IMG/VR virus record: IMGVR_UViG_3300042691_042003
Coordinates: 124,001 to 188,000 of that record
Reading direction: 5' to 3' (one strand)
DNA length: 64,000 bases
The notes beneath the pieces were generated by a model. It was not told the origin of the DNA. It saw only the letters and a list, made by a program, of their open reading frames with translations, and ran no database searches. Each line of letters begins with the position of its first letter. Positions within the stretch are counted from its first letter, which is position 1. This document shows, piece after piece, positions 24,828 through 35,996 of the stretch. The position numbers and the translations under genes are program-made.

Positions 24828-25706
24828 ATGAAAAGGATTTTTTCTCTTATATGTCTTAGTGTTTTAATCTCTTCTTGTGCTTTACAAGGCAATGAAAAAT
24901 CCGAAGAAATTCAACCTAGTAAAGAATCTATTAATAATGCTGCTAGAATAGCTACGGATAATCTTCTTTTAGGTAATCCTTCTAATGCACAAACTTCAAC
25001 TTCATTTCCTACAAATTATTTAATGCAAAAAACTCAGTTTGCATTAAGTTATAATCGAGATCAAGGAAAACCTAATTGGGTTTCCTGGCATTTAGATCCT
25101 ACTTGGGTGGGATCCTCTGATAGATGTAATTGTTTTTCTTCGGATGCCTTACTTCCTTCAGGATGGTATCGAGTAACCTCGACTTCATATACAAATTCGG
25201 GGTTTGATAGAGGTCATAATTGTCCTTCTGCTGATAGAACTCTCAATTCTACTGATAATAAAGTAACTTTTTTAATGACTAATATGATGCCTCAAGCTCC
25301 TAATAATAATCAAAGAACTTGGGCTAATTTAGAGAATTATTGTAGGACTCTTATGAATCAAGGAAATGAGCTGTATATTATTTGTGGATCTTATGGATCT
25401 GGAGGATATGGTTCTAATGGATTCAAAACTACAATAGATAATGGTAGAGTAACAGTTCCTAATAGAATTTGGAAAGTAATAGTTGTAATTCCTCAAGGAT
25501 CAAATGATATTTCTAGAATTACAACTTCAACAAGGGTTATAGCTTTAAATACACCTAATGCTAATGATCTTCTTACCACATGGGGATCATACAGGACATC
25601 TGTAGATGCAATTGAATCTGTAACTGGGTATGATCTTCTTTCTAATATCCCTGATGCAATAGAAAACGTTCTAGAAACAAATATAGATAATGGACCAACT
25701 CAATAA
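24828..25706 (+). CDS. DNA/RNA non-specific endonuclease, lipoprotein
   Basis: Lipobox LISSC; LSYNR...PNWVSW, GFDRGHNCPSAD, TNMMPQ, NQRTW. Confidence 0.92.
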   Translation: MKRIFSLICLSVLISSCALQGNEKSEEIQPSKESINNAARIATDNLLLGNPSNAQTSTSFPTNYLMQKTQFALSYNRDQGKPNWVSWHLDPTWVGSSDRCNCFSSDALLPSGWYRVTSTSYTNSGFDRGHNCPSADRTLNSTDNKVTFLMTNMMPQAPNNNQRTWANLENYCRTLMNQGNELYIICGSYGSGGYGSNGFKTTIDNGRVTVPNRIWKVIVVIPQGSNDISRITTSTRVIALNTPNANDLLTTWGSYRTSVDAIESVTGYDLLSNIPDAIENVLETNIDNGPTQ

Positions 25707-28999: not shown

Positions 29000-29428
29000 A
29001 TGAAAATAAATACTTTCGAACAATTTTTGAATGAATCTGCAGTTAGATTTACTTCAAATCCTTCACACGCTCAGCTAGCAGCTGATGGCCTTTCTCTACT
29101 CGATCAAATTCGTGTTTGGCATTGGCAAGTAACTATTGGAGACCTTCATAAAGCTCTTGGAGATTTTTATGATGAATTTTCTGGATTAAACGATACCCTA
29201 GTTGAAGCAGTTATGGGTAAGTACGGTAGATTCAGTATTAAAGGAACTAAATCACAAATCCTTGTTGATTACGATGTAGCTACTTTTGATTCTGCAATTG
29301 CTAATTACGAATCTCTTTACACAAATGATTATCGTAAGCTTTTTACTTCTGATCCTGAAATCTGCAATATTCTTGACGAAATCGTAGCAGAAATGCAGAA
29401 GCTTAAGTACCTTTCAACAATGTCTTAA
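29000..29428 (+). CDS. Ferritin/Dps-like four-helix protein (DUF5856-like) with leader
   Basis: HWQ...HKALGDFYD...D.LVEAVMGKYGR; L.NILDEI...KLKYL; leader MKINTFEQFLNE. Confidence 0.75.
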   Translation: MKINTFEQFLNESAVRFTSNPSHAQLAADGLSLLDQIRVWHWQVTIGDLHKALGDFYDEFSGLNDTLVEAVMGKYGRFSIKGTKSQILVDYDVATFDSAIANYESLYTNDYRKLFTSDPEICNILDEIVAEMQKLKYLSTMS

Positions 29429-29429
29429 T

Positions 29430-29840
29430 ATGTTCGATTCTAATTTTACTTTTACGTTGGATGACGTAAAAGACTATCAGCATTTGGAATTTCTAATAAA
29501 AGAAGAAGCTTTTCGAATATTTAATTCAAAAAAAGCAAGAAATGGAAGAACTTTTGAAGAAATTCTAGATAAAGTAAAAGTCGGTAAAACCGCCGAATAT
29601 TATCTAGTAGAACAAGGTCTTTTTAAACCAGCAAAAGACATATATCATGATTTAATTGATGAAGAAGAAGATTTTGTAGAAGTAAAAGCTTATGATGTTT
29701 ATGATTCTAATGCTCCTCATGTAAAATCAGAAATAGAAAGGATTCGTAATTCAGAATGGAATCAATCTAAATGGATGCTACTATTTCAGTATCGAAATAA
29801 TAGATACACTTTTTTAGAAAAAATTTTTATTAAGGATTGA
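29430..29840 (+). CDS. Putative restriction-endonuclease-fold (PD-(D/E)XK) protein
   Basis: GKTAE...HDLID...VEVKA spacing. Confidence 0.5.
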   Translation: MFDSNFTFTLDDVKDYQHLEFLIKEEAFRIFNSKKARNGRTFEEILDKVKVGKTAEYYLVEQGLFKPAKDIYHDLIDEEEDFVEVKAYDVYDSNAPHVKSEIERIRNSEWNQSKWMLLFQYRNNRYTFLEKIFIKD

Positions 29841-29867
29841 AACTCATAAAAATTTCAATCATATAAT
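29839..29867 (+). promoter_or_regulatory. Candidate class II promoter GAAAC-N16-CATATAAT driving the hairpin array
   Basis: Repeated motif ending about 20 nt before the first stem. Confidence 0.55.
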
Positions 29868-29880
29868 TTATACTTTTAAA

Positions 29881-30165
29881 AATTAAAGATTAGATACAGC
29901 AAACTAAATACAAACTATGGATCAATCGTTTAATAAGGTCGGATCTTATTCTACGAAAAACGAAAAACGAATCCTCGTTCCAGCAATGGTAATCAAAGTC
30001 GAATCTCTAATCTGAACTAATTAAAAGGGTAGTTTCCGCAAATTAATTACATGAATACCGCACAATTCAAATCCTCTACCCTGTCTAAAAAATTAAAGAG
30101 TGAATTCAGCAATAATTAACAAATTATCAATTGAACCTTGACCAACCCCTTCACTCTGTTTTTTT
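29881..30165 (+). ncRNA. Array of three stem-closed RNA units sharing a C(A/C)GCAA motif
   Basis: Stems AGATTAGA/TCTAATCT (29887-29894/30006-30013), AGGGTAG/CTACCCT (30026-30032/30076-30082) and AGAGTGAA/TTCACTCT (30097-30104/30150-30157). Each is preceded by AATTAA, followed by C(A/C)GCAA after the 5' arm, and followed by G after the 3' arm. Confidence 0.8.
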
Positions 30166-30189: not shown

Positions 30190-31629
30190 ATGAGCACTTT
30201 CGTTAAAGCAATGCAAAATAGAAACGAGGTTACCAAAAACGGTATGGTAACTAATAGTTCATCTCTTTCTTCTTGTGTAGATTTGTTCTTCACTATTGGA
30301 GCTTATCGATCTAAGGTCAATGATCCTCAAGCAATGATGGATCTTATAGGTAAACTTGAAGCTTCTTTCAGTCAGGATCCTTTGCTTACTCGTAAAATGC
30401 TTTTTTGGGTAAGGGATGTACGAGGAGGTGCAGGTGAACGAGAAGTTTTCCGTAAAATCCTTCGTTATCTTTGCCATACATATCCAAAATATGTAGAAAA
30501 TAACATCCATCTAATTCCTGAATTTGGTAGATGGGATGATCTTTTTATTACTTTCGGTACTTCTGTAGAAGATGTTGCAATGGAATTTATTGAAGATACT
30601 TTAAGTAGTGAAAATTCAGGTCTTCTTGCTAAATGGATTCCTAGGACAGGAGGTAAAATTTCTAAGGAGAAAAGAGTAATTGCTAATAAGATTAGGACTC
30701 ACTTAGGAATGACTCCTCGAGATTTTCGTAAATTTATCGTTTCTAAAACCAATGTTGTAGAACAACAAATGTGTAAGAAGGAATTTGATAAAATCGAATA
30801 TCAAAAAGTTCCTTCTCTTGCAATGAGCCGTTATACAAATGCTTTCCAGAAGAATGATTCTGAAGGTTATGGAAAATATATTTCTGCTGTTCAATCAGGT
30901 GAAGCTAAAGTAAATGCTTCTGCTGTTTATCCTTATGATATTGTAAAAAATCTTCGATACGGAGATCAAAATCTTTCTATTGAACAATGGAAAGCTCTTC
31001 CAAATTTCATGGAAGGAAGTAAAGAAAGAGTACTTCCTGTATGTGATGTTTCTGGTTCAATGGAAACTCCTGTTAGTGGAATAACAACTGCATTAGATGT
31101 TTGTATCTCATTAGGTCTTTATATTTCTGAAAGAAACGAAGGTCCTTTTAAGAATGCATTTATTACATTTTCCGAAAACCCTACTCTTCAATATTTGCAA
31201 GGTGATTTACGGTCTCGTTTTATGCAACTTCAATCCTCTGAATGGGGAATGAATACAAATCTAGAAGGAACATTTAAAACAATTCTAGAACAAGCTAAAA
31301 AGAACGATCTTATACAAGAAGAAATGCCTACTTGCATTCTTATTATGTCAGATATGGAATTTGATCAGGCAATCGATCATGAAGAAACTGCAATGGATAT
31401 GATTCGTAGAGAATTCGATTCTCATGGATATGATCTTCCTAAAATTGTTTTTTGGAATCTTAATGCAGGAAAAAGAAATATTCCTGTTCAAATGGATGAA
31501 AATGGGACTGCTTTGATTAGTGGATTCTCTCCTTCCATTCTTAAATCAGTTCTTTCTGGATCTACTATGACCCCTGAATCCATTATGATGGAAACACTTA
31601 ACACAGAAAGGTACTCTGTTGTAAAATGA
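30190..31629 (+). CDS. DUF2828-like Ro60/TROVE-type helical repeat plus vWA (MIDAS) protein
   Basis: DLFF, KMLFWVRDVRGGAGERE, FGRWDDL, AKWIPR, QKVPSLAM; vWA CDVSGSM and IMSDMEFD. Confidence 0.85.
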   Translation: MSTFVKAMQNRNEVTKNGMVTNSSSLSSCVDLFFTIGAYRSKVNDPQAMMDLIGKLEASFSQDPLLTRKMLFWVRDVRGGAGEREVFRKILRYLCHTYPKYVENNIHLIPEFGRWDDLFITFGTSVEDVAMEFIEDTLSSENSGLLAKWIPRTGGKISKEKRVIANKIRTHLGMTPRDFRKFIVSKTNVVEQQMCKKEFDKIEYQKVPSLAMSRYTNAFQKNDSEGYGKYISAVQSGEAKVNASAVYPYDIVKNLRYGDQNLSIEQWKALPNFMEGSKERVLPVCDVSGSMETPVSGITTALDVCISLGLYISERNEGPFKNAFITFSENPTLQYLQGDLRSRFMQLQSSEWGMNTNLEGTFKTILEQAKKNDLIQEEMPTCILIMSDMEFDQAIDHEETAMDMIRREFDSHGYDLPKIVFWNLNAGKRNIPVQMDENGTALISGFSPSILKSVLSGSTMTPESIMMETLNTERYSVVK

Positions 31630-32024
31630 TAAATCCAACTGAAATAATTTCTTCCGTAATTGGTTATGAAGGAAGAATGATTAGTTTTTCTAAGTCAGGA
31701 TATAGAAGAGATCATCCTGAAAATATAGTAATTTTTAATGCAAATATCATTCAAAAAATTGACGGAAGATACGAGAAGATATGGTTCGGAGATCTTGATA
31801 TTACTCTCGATTATGAAAAGCTAATTCAAATTTCCGAATTGCTAGATACGGAAATTTTTGTACTTCACGAAATGGATTGTAGGTTTGATAACGAAGATAA
31901 ACCTAATGTAATGAATTTCGTAGTAAGCTCTTTCTTTAATCGAAATAGCCCTATTGAAATTAATAAATCTTTTGATACATATTATAAAATAATTAATGGA
32001 ATTCCAAAACGCATAAATGCTTAA
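31626..32024 (+). CDS. Hypothetical protein
   Basis: Operonic; GRMISFSKSGY...FNANI...KIWFGDLD. Confidence 0.7.
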   Translation: MINPTEIISSVIGYEGRMISFSKSGYRRDHPENIVIFNANIIQKIDGRYEKIWFGDLDITLDYEKLIQISELLDTEIFVLHEMDCRFDNEDKPNVMNFVVSSFFNRNSPIEINKSFDTYYKIINGIPKRINA

Positions 32025-32517
32025 TAGGAAAAATAAAATAAACGATGAAGTTCGTTACCCTCAGGTAAGGGTCATAGGTGAAGGAGAATCACAAATAATG
32101 AGCTCTCGAGATGCCTATCAATTAGCAAAATCTCAAAATCTTGATTTAATTCTTGTAAATGAAAATCAAAATCCTCCAATAGTTAGGATTGCCGATTATC
32201 AGAAATTTTTATACTTACAAGAAAAATCAGAAAAAGAAAGATCGAAAAACACAAAATTTGAGATAAAAGAAATTCAACTTAGTTGTGATATAGCCGAAAA
32301 TGATTTAAAAACTAAGGCTAATCACGCTATTCGATTTCTTCAAAAAGGAGATCGAGTTAAAGTTGTTTTAGCTTTAATTGGTAGGCAAAAAAGTACTCCT
32401 CAAAGAGGAGAAAATACCATGTTAAATTTTGAAGAACGGATATCAGATATTGCTAGTCCCGAATCGGCTATTAAATATGACGGTAATCGTTGGATAGCAA
32501 TATATAAAAGAAAATGA
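32017..32517 (+). CDS. infC: Translation initiation factor IF-3
   Basis: INDEVRYPQVRVI, DLILV..NQNPPIVRIADYQKFLY, KEIQL...ENDL.TK...AIRFLQKGDRVKV...GRQ. Confidence 0.93.
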   Translation: MLNRKNKINDEVRYPQVRVIGEGESQIMSSRDAYQLAKSQNLDLILVNENQNPPIVRIADYQKFLYLQEKSEKERSKNTKFEIKEIQLSCDIAENDLKTKANHAIRFLQKGDRVKVVLALIGRQKSTPQRGENTMLNFEERISDIASPESAIKYDGNRWIAIYKRK

Positions 32518-34773: not shown

Positions 34774-34980
34774 ATGAAAGGCAAACTTGTAAAATTTAAT
34801 GGTGATTGGGTTATCCAATATTTTGATGCATTTTCCGTAAGTAATATCCCTTTACATCCGGCAGATAAAACTTCTTTTTTAAACGAAGGATCTGAAGTAG
34901 AATTCGATATTTTTGATGAAGAAGTAATGATCGAAGGTAAAGATAGGTTTGCTAGAATTTTAATCCAACATAATTTTTAA
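34774..34980 (+). CDS. Hypothetical protein (OB-like small beta domain)
   Basis: MKGKL..W...LPLHP-type start; similar to 41050. Confidence 0.55.
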   Translation: MKGKLVKFNGDWVIQYFDAFSVSNIPLHPADKTSFLNEGSEVEFDIFDEEVMIEGKDRFARILIQHNF

Positions 34981-35996
34981 TGGAAATAGACGTAATATTA
35001 GGACTTCAATACGGAGATGAGGCAAAAGCTAAATGCACTTATTCTCTTCTAAAACCTCATCCTGGAGGTGGATCTGATGAATATGATTATGCTTTTCGAT
35101 TTAATGGAGGACCTAATGCAGGTCATACCATTTATCATGAAAAACGTAAGATCGTAACTCATCAAGTTCCAATTGGTGTATTTTTTGATATACCTTCCAT
35201 TATCGGACCCGGATGTGTTGTTGATTTAGGAAAGCTAGAAGCCGAAGTAAAAGAAATTTCGGAATTTCTAGGAAAGGATATATCTAATCTTATTTCTATA
35301 GATTATCGAGCACACATCATAACCGAAGAACATAAAGAATTAGATTCGGATGGATCTACTATTGGATCGACTCGTTCAGGTATTGGTTATGCATATTCTG
35401 ATAAACATCTTAGAAGAGGAATCCGTTTTGAAAATGTCGTTTCAGATTTTCAAAAGATCGATTCTCTACAAATTCTAAACGGACAAAACGATTATTTTAT
35501 CCTATTTGAAGGAGCTCAAGGATGGGGTTTAGATATTAATTTTGGTGATTATCCTTACGTAACTTCTTCTCTTTGTGGAATTGCAGGGGTAATTGCAAGT
35601 GGTGTAAGACCTATCGATATACGTAACGTAATTGGAGTAGCAAAGATATATGAAACTTACGTAGGTAACAAACAATTTCAATCGGAAGATCCGATTTTTA
35701 TACGATTACAAGAAGAAGGACAAGAGATTGGTGCAACAACCGGTCGTAAAAGACAATGTAATTGGTTAGATTTAGATCGTCTAATCGAGGCTTGTAGTGT
35801 TAATCAAGTCACTGCAATTATTATAAACAAAACTGATATTCTTGAAAAGGTAGGAGTTTTTAAGTGCTTCTTTGAAGGAAAAATGAAAGAATTTAATTCT
35901 ATTGATGATCTAAAAGATTTTATCACTAAAACTTTAGAAGAATCATTTGGAGAAGATTTTCCGATTGTTTTTTCTGATAATCCTTATACTATATGA
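34980..35996 (+). CDS. purA: Adenylosuccinate synthetase, compact form
   Basis: GLQYGDEAKAK, GGPNAGHT, EGAQG, PYVTSS, GATTGRKR, NKTD; catalytic Asp13 retained. Confidence 0.88.
   Translation: MEIDVILGLQYGDEAKAKCTYSLLKPHPGGGSDEYDYAFRFNGGPNAGHTIYHEKRKIVTHQVPIGVFFDIPSIIGPGCVVDLGKLEAEVKEISEFLGKDISNLISIDYRAHIITEEHKELDSDGSTIGSTRSGIGYAYSDKHLRRGIRFENVVSDFQKIDSLQILNGQNDYFILFEGAQGWGLDINFGDYPYVTSSLCGIAGVIASGVRPIDIRNVIGVAKIYETYVGNKQFQSEDPIFIRLQEEGQEIGATTGRKRQCNWLDLDRLIEACSVNQVTAIIINKTDILEKVGVFKCFFEGKMKEFNSIDDLKDFITKTLEESFGEDFPIVFSDNPYTI

What the first reader, a model, noticed from the sequence alone, without database searches (positions are those of the whole stretch)
29881..30165. Three-unit structured RNA array with a conserved C(A/C)GCAA motif directly upstream of a Ro60/TROVE-like gene
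Seen: in a 350-nt intergenic gap, three units share one grammar: AATTAA, a 5' arm starting AG, the motif TACAGCAA / TTTCCGCAA / TTCAGCAA, a variable interior, AA(T/C)C.., then the complementary 3' arm and G. The arms differ in sequence but pair perfectly (8, 7 and 8 bp), a covariation-like pattern. Unit 1 (127 nt) has nested helices (AATAAG/CTTATT, TCGTTT/AAACGA) and an extra TTCCAGCAA at 29978; units 2 and 3 are 57 and 61 nt. A T7 run (30159-30165) follows unit 3, ATG is at 30190, and a promoter-like motif lies just upstream. Known: Ro60 binds the terminal helix of Y RNAs, whose genes are usually adjacent in bacteria. The bacterial Y RNA motif (GNCGAA) and tRNA-like module are not seen here. 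Inference: either a new class of small Y-like RNAs processed from one transcript, or a multi-site operator through which the protein autoregulates. Either would be an RNA-protein module I cannot match to a named family.
Basis: partly seen in the sequence, partly recalled or inferred. Interest (0 to 1): 0.88.

Follow-up and report, generated by a model that had tools for sequence, protein, structure and literature searches.

The report
Phage Y-like small RNAs beside Ro60-like gene
The gap in front of a phage gene for a Ro60-shaped RNA-binding protein holds three small structured RNAs of an undescribed but widespread class that looks like the phage counterpart of Y RNAs and closely resembles the enigmatic Class I RNAs of social amoebae.

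Summary
Window 29887-30014, 30026-30083 and 30097-30158 are three units. Each has a 7-8 bp terminal helix, a 2-3 nt linker, C(A/C)GCAA, a variable interior, an A-rich stretch, the 3' arm and a G. None of 5000 shuffles of the gap gives even two such units.

A covariance model built from relatives finds only these three sites in the 64 kb. In 129 related loci it hits only the gene strand, next to homologs of the 30190 gene. Helix pairs show double compensatory changes, and CAGCAA and the 3' G are about 100% conserved.

The protein (DUF2828+DUF7788, PHROG 850) has no sequence match to TROVE. Its AlphaFold model matches only Ro60 structures. Homologs occur in 711 cultured phage genomes, including Felix O1 and cluster L mycobacteriophages, and I found the same unannotated units beside them. 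There the units lie downstream of the gene or among tRNAs, which argues against an operator. In several lineages the long unit carries a YrlA-like tRNA module. The window's long unit does not.

Best reading: an array of Y-like sRNAs that partner a Ro60-like protein, a new variant of a known kind. The units also share every defining feature of Dictyostelium Class I RNAs, but score below Rfam's threshold.

The parts
29860..29873 (+). Conserved promoter-like block CATATAATTTATAC (TATAAT at 29862-29867), 14 nt before unit 1
   Evidence: The block is invariant in the four syntenic loci W, L071, L072 and L073, while the flanking intergenic sequence varies. The consensus sigma-70 scan did not flag it because there is no good -35. 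Promoter function is inferred.
29887..30014 (+). Unit 1, a long Y-like RNA of 128 nt. It has an 8-bp terminal helix (29887-94 / 30006-13), CAGCAA at 29897-902, a multi-hairpin interior and a 3' G at 30014.
   Evidence: Its 5' module is hit by CM R1 at 20.8 bits. The inner stem TCGT/ACGA is replaced by CTTCTT/AAGAAG in L071 and by CTGT/ACAG in L072. It has no T-loop and no tRNA or YrlA hit.
30026..30083 (+). Unit 2, a short Y-like RNA of 58 nt. It has a 7-bp helix (30026-32 / 30076-82), CCGCAA at 30036-41 and a 3' G at 30083.
   Evidence: CM R1 scores 45.6 bits, E 9e-8 (this unit was in the seed). The probability that the motif is unpaired is 0.96.
30097..30158 (+). Unit 3, a short Y-like RNA of 62 nt. 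It has an 8-bp helix (30097-104 / 30150-57), CAGCAA at 30107-112 and a 3' G at 30158.
   Evidence: CM R1 scores 36.3 bits, E 1e-5, although this unit was left out of the seed. It aligns full length to Rfam Dicty_Class_I_RNA at 15.7 bits, below threshold.
30159..30165 (+). U7 tail directly after unit 3. It may be a 3' tail or a weak terminator.
   Evidence: T-rich runs follow the last unit in L071-L073, L002, L038 and L039 as well. The terminator scan did not flag it.
30190..31629 (+). Gene for a 479-aa Ro60-like protein: a HEAT-repeat ring plus a vWA domain with the MIDAS motif DxSxS (D286, S288, S290)
   Evidence: Pfam gives DUF2828+DUF7788 and no TROVE. PHROG 850 'RNA-binding protein' matches at E 3e-148. 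The AF2 model has pLDDT 89.7. The top 12 Foldseek PDB hits are all Ro60/TROVE/Rsr, with E from 7e-9 to 3.5e-6. Invariant MIDAS residues are listed.

Best explanation
The gap encodes an array of three small non-coding RNAs, one long (128 nt) and two short (58 and 62 nt). They are the RNA partners of the Ro60-like ring protein encoded immediately downstream, so they are the functional equivalent of Y RNAs.

Inferred steps:
- One transcript starts at the conserved TATAAT block near 29862.
- It runs through the three units and, by read-through past the U-run, into the gene.
- The units are cut out at their conserved boundaries (5' A/G..., 3' ...CU-G).
- The protein recognises the terminal helix together with the adjacent single-stranded C-N-GCAA, which sits where GGUCCGA or GNCGAA lies in known Y RNAs.
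- The variable interior (in relatives, a tRNA-like module) recruits or mimics other RNA-handling factors. The resulting RNP acts on host or phage RNA during infection, possibly as a counter-defence.

Shown here: the units exist, are beyond chance, are conserved with covariation, are strand-specific, and are physically linked to this gene family. The protein has a Ro60 fold.

Inferred, not shown: transcription, processing, binding and the downstream function.
For: - Chance is excluded by the shuffle test.
- CM R1 finds only these three sites in the 64-kb window, including unit 3, which was not in the seed.
- In 49 viral or metagenome loci there are 67 hits at E<=1, all on the gene strand and all flanking the homologous gene.
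- In 80 independent genome/MAG loci there are 41 hits at E<=0.1, all on the gene strand.
- A grammar search gives 55 units on the gene strand against 4 on the opposite strand, and 141 against 35 in the second set.
- Terminal helix: 96.5% and 99.6% of cells are paired, against 30-46% when partners are slid. Double changes occur at 6 of 7 and 7 of 7 pairs.
- G-U pairs are seen only when the + strand is read.
- Column conservation is C100 A93 G100 C100 A98 A98, and the 3' G is at 100%.
- The motif is mostly unpaired, mean probability 0.65.
- The protein has a Ro60 fold and matches phage TROVE and 'Ro-like' proteins in BFVD.
- Long units in L027, mycobacteriophage LilDestine, Felix O1a and Cronobacter phage S13 carry T-arm, acceptor and D-arm in YrlA order. 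Rfam YrlA scores 41.2 and 21.4 bits on that module only.
- Syntenic relatives keep the arms, the motif and the promoter block while the interiors drift.
- Precedents in the literature: Y RNAs encoded next to Ro60 on the same strand and processed from one precursor (PMC4201824); two Yrl RNAs upstream of a phage Ro60 gene (PMC12135203); Felixounavirus Bas63 gp130, Ro60-like, lying upstream of tRNAs and countering the Ppl defence (10.1101/2024.10.10.617714).
Against: - There are no expression or binding data.
- The canonical Ro-binding motif (GNCGAA or GGUCCGA) is absent, and Rfam Y_RNA and YrlA do not hit the window.
- The protein is not TROVE by sequence. Pfam gives none at E<=10, and the family profile against PDB sequences gives Ro60 only at E 0.3-0.6.
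- The window's long unit has no tRNA-like module.
- Some family members (KVP40-like L025 and L026, and L023 and L024) show no unit within 3 kb.
- The covariation counts come from alignments that were selected by, or fitted to, a model that rewards pairing.
Confidence: 0.72

Rival explanations
1. The units form a cis-acting leader or operator. They stay part of the mRNA 5' region, and the protein binds them to autoregulate its own translation, termination or stability.
For: In this window and in L071-L074, L002 and L035-L039 the array lies between the only promoter-like block and the start codon, and no separate promoter precedes the gene. A U-run follows unit 3. In KVP40-like loci a lone CAGCAA sits in the leader 16 nt before the ATG, next to the GAGGAA ribosome-binding site.
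Against: In the clade at 55% identity the same long-plus-two-short array lies downstream of the gene, which has its own TTGACA/TATACT promoter. In LilDestine the units are downstream. In Felix O1a they are interspersed with tRNA genes. Arrays reach 6 units. Long units carry tRNA-like modules. None of this fits a dedicated leader.
Confidence: 0.08
2. The units are autonomous small RNAs that do not bind the neighbouring protein. They could be tRNA-cluster passengers, decoys for host nucleases or defence systems, or processing punctuation. In this reading the linkage reflects co-regulation only.
For: In Felix O1a the units sit in a tRNA cluster. The stem-plus-CAGCAA module is also grafted into the anticodon position of tRNA-shaped RNAs. 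A 7-bp helix plus an unpaired 3' base resembles an acceptor stem. The look-alike Dictyostelium Class I RNAs are known to bind an RRM protein, Rnp1A (PMC7919456).
Against: The units are tightly and strand-specifically adjacent to this one gene family across phages of many host phyla. The gene product has the fold of the one protein family known to use such stem-plus-motif RNAs.
Confidence: 0.15
3. The units are chance repeats, ordinary terminators or DNA-level sites such as recombination or replication sites.
For: The region is AT-rich, and short inverted repeats are common in such sequence.
Against: Shuffles never give 2 or more units. The motif is non-palindromic and the hits are strand-specific. 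Covariation includes G-U pairs. The loops of 40-110 nt are unlike terminators, and the terminator scan finds none.
Confidence: 0.02

Closest known systems
Bacterial and phage Y RNAs (YrlA/YrlB, Yrn1/Yrn2; Thermus phage phiLo Yrl1/Yrl2)
   Same: They are encoded beside a Ro60-type gene on the same strand, often two or more per locus, with one long RNA (tRNA-like) plus shorter ones. [quoted passage not shown] In M. smegmatis they are processed from one precursor upstream of the gene (PMC4201824, PMC12135203). Long units of relatives match the tRNA-like part of Rfam YrlA.
   Different: The motif is C-N-GCAA rather than GNCGAA(N)G, CGAA or GGUCCGA. There is no Rfam YrlA or Y_RNA hit in the window. 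The short units are only 50-65 nt with a nearly unstructured interior. The window's long unit has no tRNA-like module. The partner protein is DUF2828+DUF7788, and its relation to TROVE is visible only by fold.
Dictyostelid Class I RNAs (Rfam RF01414; Kjellin et al. 2021, PMC7919456)
   Same: Both are about 60 nt long with low GC. Both have a 6-8 bp helix joining the 5' and 3' ends that covaries. Both have a motif directly after the 5' strand ending in CAGCAA, with the same near-invariant C..CAA, a variable interior and an A-run before the 3' strand. Both have a conserved 5' G and a 3' CUG(U). Compare the consensus strings. RF01414 aligns end to end with window units 3 and 1 and with two LilDestine units.
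   Different: The scores are 14-19 bits against a gathering threshold of 41.5. There is no hit to unit 2 or to the six L120 units. Class I RNAs are eukaryotic, have DUSE promoters, are dispersed as 18-39 genes, are known to bind the RRM protein Rnp1A, and were reported as unique to Dictyostelia. No link to a Ro-like protein is known. I could not check whether Dictyostelium encodes a DUF2828 protein.
Felixounavirus Bas63 gp130 (PhageMaP preprint 10.1101/2024.10.10.617714)
   Same: It is a Ro60-like protein by structure, it lies directly upstream of the tRNA stretch, and the authors guessed that Y RNAs hide among the tRNAs. The Felix O1a ortholog gp42 is 38% identical to the window protein. I found four C-N-GCAA units between its tRNAs. 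They are unannotated in RefSeq phage Mushroom.
   Different: That the two are orthologs is inferred from genus-wide conservation (251 of 251 records). I did not check the Bas63 sequence itself. The window phage is a 246-kb freshwater jumbo phage whose array lies upstream of the gene, with no tRNAs in the 64 kb.
Eukaryotic Ro60-Y RNA RNP
   Same: Both combine a ring-shaped HEAT plus vWA protein with a small RNA that has a terminal helix and sometimes a 3' U-run.
   Different: There is no bulged-C helix and no GGUCCGA. The units are prokaryotic-virus encoded and polycistronic.

Membership tests
Y RNA (functional class: Ro60-bound ncRNA) | Encoded near, and on the same strand as, a Ro60-type gene | tested here: met
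   The units end 25 nt before the gene. The same holds in relatives, and all CM hits are on the gene strand.
Y RNA (functional class: Ro60-bound ncRNA) | Terminal helix formed by the 5' and 3' ends | tested here: met
   The helices are 7-8 bp, and 6 of 7 and 7 of 7 pairs show double changes.
Y RNA (functional class: Ro60-bound ncRNA) | Conserved Ro-binding sequence GGUCCGA (animals) or GNCGAA(N)G (bacteria) near the 5' end | tested here: not met
   A different motif, C-N-GCAA, occupies the equivalent position. The motif definitions are from PMC4201824.
Y RNA (functional class: Ro60-bound ncRNA) | Physically bound by the Ro60 ortholog | not testable with these tools
   This needs RIP, CLIP or EMSA.
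YrlA (Rfam RF02553) | Score at or above the gathering threshold of 69 bits, with the tRNA-like T, acceptor and D module | tested here: not met
   There is no hit in the window even at E<=10, no tRNA and no T-loop in unit 1. Long units of relatives score 41.2 and 21.4 bits on the tRNA-like part only.
Ro60 / TROVE protein family | TROVE (HEAT-repeat ring) domain detectable by sequence | tested here: not met
   Pfam gives no TROVE at E<=10. phmmer and the family profile against PDB give Ro60 only at E 0.3-0.6. NCBIfam gives nothing.
Ro60 / TROVE protein family | Ring-plus-vWA fold matching solved Ro60 structures | tested here: met
   The model has pLDDT 89.7. The top 12 PDB hits are all Ro60, Rsr or phiLo TROVE, with TM 0.37-0.60 over 512-575 columns.
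Ro60 / TROVE protein family | vWA domain with MIDAS motif | tested here: met
   D286, S288, S290, T356 and D388 are invariant in 35 sequences. The distant relatives L032 and L069 touch Pfam vWA_Ro60 at E 6e-4 and 3e-5.
Dictyostelium Class I RNA (Rfam RF01414) | Score at or above the gathering threshold of 41.5 bits | tested here: not met
   Unit 3 scores 15.7 bits and unit 1 scores 14.8 bits. Unit 2 has no hit.
Dictyostelium Class I RNA (Rfam RF01414) | About 60 nt; short covarying terminal stem; adjacent motif with invariant U3, C6, C9, A10, A11; 5' G; 3' CUGU | tested here: met
   Units 2 and 3 are 58 and 62 nt and read UUU-CCGCAA and AUU-CAGCAA. The G at helix position 2 pairs with the C of the 3' CUG(U). 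The feature list is from PMC7919456.
Dictyostelium Class I RNA (Rfam RF01414) | Eukaryotic gene with DUSE promoter; binds Rnp1A | not testable with these tools
   These features do not apply to a phage.
tRNA | Cloverleaf detected by ARAGORN or Rfam | tested here: not met
   The window has 0 tRNAs.

The most novel reading that the evidence does not exclude
The phage C-N-GCAA RNAs and the Class I RNAs of dictyostelid amoebae may be one RNA family. That family would be the dedicated RNA partner of DUF2828-type Ro60-like proteins, which occur in phages, in giant viruses of protists (Pithovirus, Marseillevirus, CroV and ChoanoV1) and, according to Pfam's description (from memory, not checked here), in eukaryotes. 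Class I RNAs have had no known function since 2004 and are thought to be unique to Dictyostelia. On this reading they would be the amoebal equivalent of Y RNAs, possibly acquired from a virus or a bacterium.
Probability: 0.3. Interest if true: 0.92.

Novelty: new variant of a known kind. Interest (0 to 1): 0.78.

Why it matters
Ro60-Y RNA particles are a conserved RNA quality-control and repair module. In phages they have so far been documented only for TROVE-annotated proteins.

This work shows three things:
- A much larger phage protein family carries its own RNA class. The family is found in 711 of 50,697 phage genomes, including Felix O1, Listeria P100-type, staphylococcal, enterococcal and cluster L mycobacteriophages.
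- That RNA class has a distinct, almost invariant recognition motif. It is missing from Rfam and from genome annotation.
- The class comes both as minimal 55-65 nt forms and as tRNA-fused forms.

This supplies the missing RNA component for the reported counter-defence activity of Bas63 gp130. It gives a compact stem-plus-CAGCAA module that can be tested by mutation. It also yields a concrete, testable hypothesis for the long-unexplained Dictyostelium Class I RNAs.

Tried and rejected
- Rfam at gathering threshold on the whole window found nothing. At E<=10 on the region it gave only sub-threshold snoRNA-like noise plus Dicty_Class_I_RNA.
- ARAGORN found no tRNA.
- Megablast of 24 kb against phages found no match.
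- The sigma-70 and terminator scans flagged nothing on the + strand at the units.
- The AAATTAAAG spacer motif is not enriched in the window: 3 copies against 5.9 expected. It is therefore not a phage-wide promoter.
- Sequence-level links of the protein to Ro60 failed.
- The second CAGCAA in unit 1 was rejected as a conserved feature, because L072 lacks it.
- A conserved internal hairpin in the short units was not supported. RNAalifold gives only the terminal helix, and the MFE interiors differ.
- A second GCAA near the 3' side occurs in only 21 of 93 short units.
- The 132-aa neighbour (31626-32024) gave a confident model but no fold match, no Pfam and no PHROG hit.
- My guess of the Bas63 accession was wrong: MZ501111 is Bas51.
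- Literature searches for DUF2828, PF11443, DDB_G0281243 and phage Ro/Y RNA found no description of these RNAs. The library is incomplete, so prior description elsewhere cannot be excluded.
- I could not reach any eukaryotic DUF2828 sequence with the collections on hand.

Full report
**What is there.** The window comes from a 246-kb viral contig, IMGVR_UViG_3300042691_042003. Between a 136-aa ORF that ends at 29840 and the 479-aa ORF that starts at 30190 lies a 349-nt gap with no ORF of 50 aa or more. There are three units: 29887-30014, 30026-30083 and 30097-30158. Each is preceded by AATTAA. Each consists of a 5' arm beginning AG, a 2-3 nt linker, C(A/C)GCAA, a variable interior, a perfectly complementary 3' arm of 8, 7 or 8 bp, and a G. 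A U7 run follows unit 3. Single-sequence folding recovers each terminal helix, with z-scores of -2.1, -2.2 and -3.8. A grammar search finds 3 units in the gap. In 5000 dinucleotide-preserving shuffles none has two or more units, and nine have one.

**The neighbouring protein.**
- Pfam assigns DUF2828 plus DUF7788 (a vWA domain) and no TROVE, even at E<=10.
- PHROGs places the protein in phrog_850 'RNA-binding protein' at E 3e-148. NCBIfam has nothing.
- Sequence searches against PDB do not reach Ro60. phmmer finds none, and a 35-sequence profile gives Ro60 only at E 0.3-0.6.
- An AlphaFold2 model built on that alignment is confident, with pLDDT 89.7 and pTM 0.89.
- Its 12 best PDB matches are all Ro60/TROVE proteins: Thermus phage phiLo Ro60, Xenopus and human Ro60, and D. 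radiodurans Rsr. They cover the whole length, with E from 7e-9 to 3.5e-6 and TM up to 0.60. Isolated vWA domains come only after them.
- The MIDAS residues D286, S288, S290, T356 and D388 are invariant.

Against predicted viral structures the model also matches DUF2828/DUF7788 proteins of giant viruses of protists and, more weakly, phage TROVE and 'Ro-like' proteins.

**Comparative evidence for the RNA.** Homologs of the gene were collected from viral contigs (33 loci), metagenomes (37), four close relatives, bacterial and archaeal genome assemblies (80) and cultured phages.
- The closest relatives (65-78% protein identity; L071-L073) are syntenic: DUF5856, a 131-aa ORF, the gap, the Ro-like gene, a 132-aa ORF, IF3. 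They keep a gap of about 350 nt holding three units. The arms, the C-N-GCAA motif, the 3' G and an upstream CATATAATTTATAC block are conserved, while the interiors drift.
- The inner stem of unit 1 changes compensatorily: TCGT/ACGA in the window, CTTCTT/AAGAAG in L071, and CTGT/ACAG in L072.
- More distant relatives (59-61%; L002, L035-L039) have the same three-unit layout with different arm sequences, for example AGATTGG/CCAATCT, AGGGTAC/GTACCCT and AGAGTGAT/ATCACTCT.
- A strict grammar search over the first 70 loci found 55 distinct units on the gene strand and 4 on the opposite strand. In the 80 genome loci the counts were 141 and 35.

**Covariance model.** I built a model (R1) from 18 short units of relatives plus window unit 2, leaving window unit 3 out.
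- In the 64-kb window it finds only 30026-30083 (45.6 bits), 30097-30158 (36.3 bits, E 1e-5) and the 5' part of unit 1 (20.8 bits). Nothing else is below E=1.
- In 49 loci it gives 67 hits at E<=1. All are on the gene strand and all lie directly upstream or downstream of the gene.
- In the 80 independent genome loci it gives 41 hits at E<=0.1, all on the gene strand.
- On the resulting alignments 96.5% and 99.6% of cells in the 7-bp helix are paired, against 30-46% when partners are slid. Double changes occur at 6 of 7 and 7 of 7 pairs. No shuffle reaches the observed covariation score.
- These alignments are fitted to a model that rewards pairing, so the counts lean towards the structure. The strand and position specificity does not have that bias.
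- Column frequencies are C100 A93 G100 C100 A98 A98 for the motif and 100% for the 3' G. There is an A-run before the 3' arm and a near-invariant G-C at helix position 2.
- Across 224 grammar units the motif is CAGCAA 165 times, CCGCAA 27, CTGCAA 23 and CGGCAA 9, so the core is C-N-GCAA.
- The motif is predicted to be mostly unpaired, with mean probability 0.65. RNAalifold supports no conserved interior structure in the short units.

**Position of the units relative to the gene.** In the clade at 53-57% identity (L003-L022) the gene has its own TTGACA-N17-TATACT promoter. The array, again one long and two short units, lies downstream of the gene.
- In mycobacteriophage LilDestine, whose gp55 is annotated 'Ro-like RNA binding protein', three units lie downstream at L076 3972-4022, 4033-4155 and 4167-4229.
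- In Salmonella phage Felix O1a four units are interspersed with tRNA genes downstream of gp42, at L077 4755-4822, 4922-4980, 5376-5444 and 5463-5588.
- In Cronobacter phage S13 one unit follows the gene.
- These positions are unannotated in a RefSeq Felixounavirus.
- Some gut-phage-like loci have arrays of five or six units.

This distribution argues against a dedicated 5' operator and for free-standing RNAs. In the window itself no separate promoter lies between unit 3 and the ATG. Co-transcription and some feedback therefore remain possible.

**Link to Y RNAs.** In several lineages the long unit encloses a T-arm (GGTTCGAWTCC), an acceptor-like hairpin and a D-arm, in the permuted order typical of YrlA. 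This is seen in L027, L033, L063, L069, LilDestine, Felix O1a and S13.
- Rfam YrlA matches that module in L027 (41.2 bits, E 2e-7) and LilDestine (21.4 bits). Both are below the gathering score, and neither match extends into the terminal, Ro-binding part.
- The long units of the window's clade (W, L002, L036, L038, L004, L043, L052, L054) have no T-loop.
- Chen et al. 2014 (PMC4201824) defined bacterial Y RNAs by adjacency to Ro60, a terminal stem, a GNCGAA(N)G motif near the 5' end and a tRNA-like domain. They searched only genomes with TROVE-annotated proteins.
- The phiLo study (PMC12135203) found two Yrl RNAs with a CGAA motif upstream of a phage TROVE gene.

The RNAs here occupy the same genomic and architectural niche, but with a different motif and a different protein subfamily.

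**How widespread the family is.** tblastn finds the protein in 711 of 50,697 phage records, nearly all at full length. Hosts include Escherichia and Salmonella (Felixounavirus), Vibrio, Campylobacter, Listeria, Staphylococcus, Enterococcus, Bacillus, Aeromonas and Mycobacterium. All 251 Felixounavirus-like records carry the gene.
- The PhageMaP preprint (10.1101/2024.10.10.617714) reports that Bas63 gp130 is Ro60-like by structure, lies directly upstream of the tRNAs, counters the Ppl defence, and may use Y RNAs hidden among the tRNAs. The units I found in Felix O1a are the obvious candidates. That gp130 is the ortholog of gp42 is inferred, not checked.
- LeBron gp53, a cluster L Ro-like protein, is moderately toxic when overexpressed (PMC13148394).

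**Unexpected resemblance to Dictyostelium Class I RNAs.** The only Rfam family that aligns end to end with the units is RF01414, Dictyostelium Class I RNA.
- It scores 15.7 bits on window unit 3, 14.8 bits on unit 1, and 18.9 and 14.3 bits on two LilDestine units. These are far below the gathering score of 41.5 and are not significant on their own. Unit 2 and the six units of L120 are not hit.
- The Rfam consensus is GaUcuC-CUUA-CAGCAA-UuaAA...AAAAAcCCUu-GagAuC-UG.
- The phage consensus is A-GGgUag-aUU-CAGCAA-uUUAAA...AAAAAaa-cuAcCCU-G.
- The two share length, low GC, a covarying terminal stem, the position and the invariant letters of the motif, the A-run, the 5' G and the 3' CUG(U).
- Those are exactly the features Kjellin et al. 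2021 (PMC7919456) list as defining Class I RNAs, which they reported as unique to Dictyostelia.

I could not test whether dictyostelids encode a DUF2828 protein. I therefore record this as a lead, not a finding.

**Verdict.** The feature is real, non-random and conserved. It is most likely an array of three Y-like small RNAs serving the adjacent Ro60-like protein (confidence 0.72). Transcription, processing, binding and biological role are all inferred. It is a new variant of a known kind of module. Rivals are a cis-regulatory leader (0.08), RNAs unrelated to the neighbouring protein (0.15) and chance (0.02).

Noticed in passing
window 32017-32517; also L071 3340-3849, L072 3331-3849, L073 3337-3843: A phage-encoded translation initiation factor IF3 homolog (IF3_N plus IF3_C, E about 1e-22) lies two genes downstream of the Ro-like gene. 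The synteny is conserved in close relatives.
   Followed up: partly
window 31626-32024: A 132-aa ORF overlaps the stop codon of the Ro-like gene (ATGA) and is syntenic in L071-L073. It has about 98 homologs and no Pfam or PHROG hit. The AF2 model is confident (pLDDT 94.6) but has no PDB fold match (best E 0.4). It could be a partner of the RNP.
   Followed up: yes
L029 4793-4910, L031 4779-4896, L078 4395-4515 and 4525-4637: These are tRNA-shaped RNAs of 113-121 nt that ARAGORN rejects and Rfam tRNA accepts. Their anticodon arm is replaced by a hairpin plus linker plus CAGCAA (CAGCAC or CAGCAT in phage S13). This is the circular permutation of the long units, which suggests that stem-plus-CAGCAA is a portable module.
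   Followed up: partly
L025 and L026 (KVP40-like), about 2975-2995: No unit lies within 3 kb of the gene. However, a conserved UUUUACAGCAAUU sits in the mRNA leader 16 nt before the ATG, next to the GAGGAA ribosome-binding site. This could be an autoregulatory site in that lineage.
   Followed up: no
L027 2160-2476 and 1805-1903: There is a weak match to permuted tmRNA (21 bits, E 0.07) upstream of the units. A further CAGCAA unit there encloses a near-threshold tRNA-like structure (26.8 bits).
   Followed up: no
window 29000-29428 and 29430-29840: The upstream neighbours are a DUF5856 / Dps-like 'starvation-inducible regulator' homolog and a weak MSV199 (Bro-N/KilA-like) domain protein. A non-specific endonuclease (24828-25706) and an adenylosuccinate synthetase (34980-35996) are nearby.
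   Followed up: partly
L160 4182-6616 (RefSeq NC_041923.1): In this record the tRNA features are annotated on the strand opposite to the Ro-like gene. ARAGORN and Rfam place the same tRNAs of the near-identical Felix O1a on the gene strand. This is a likely annotation strand error.
   Followed up: no
short units in many loci, e.g. L027 2917-2925, L055, L056, L038 2380-2388; window 30058-30064: A second (C/U)GCAA followed by an A-run lies just before the 3' arm in 21 of 93 short units. This gives a pseudo-symmetric layout, and its meaning is unknown.
   Followed up: partly
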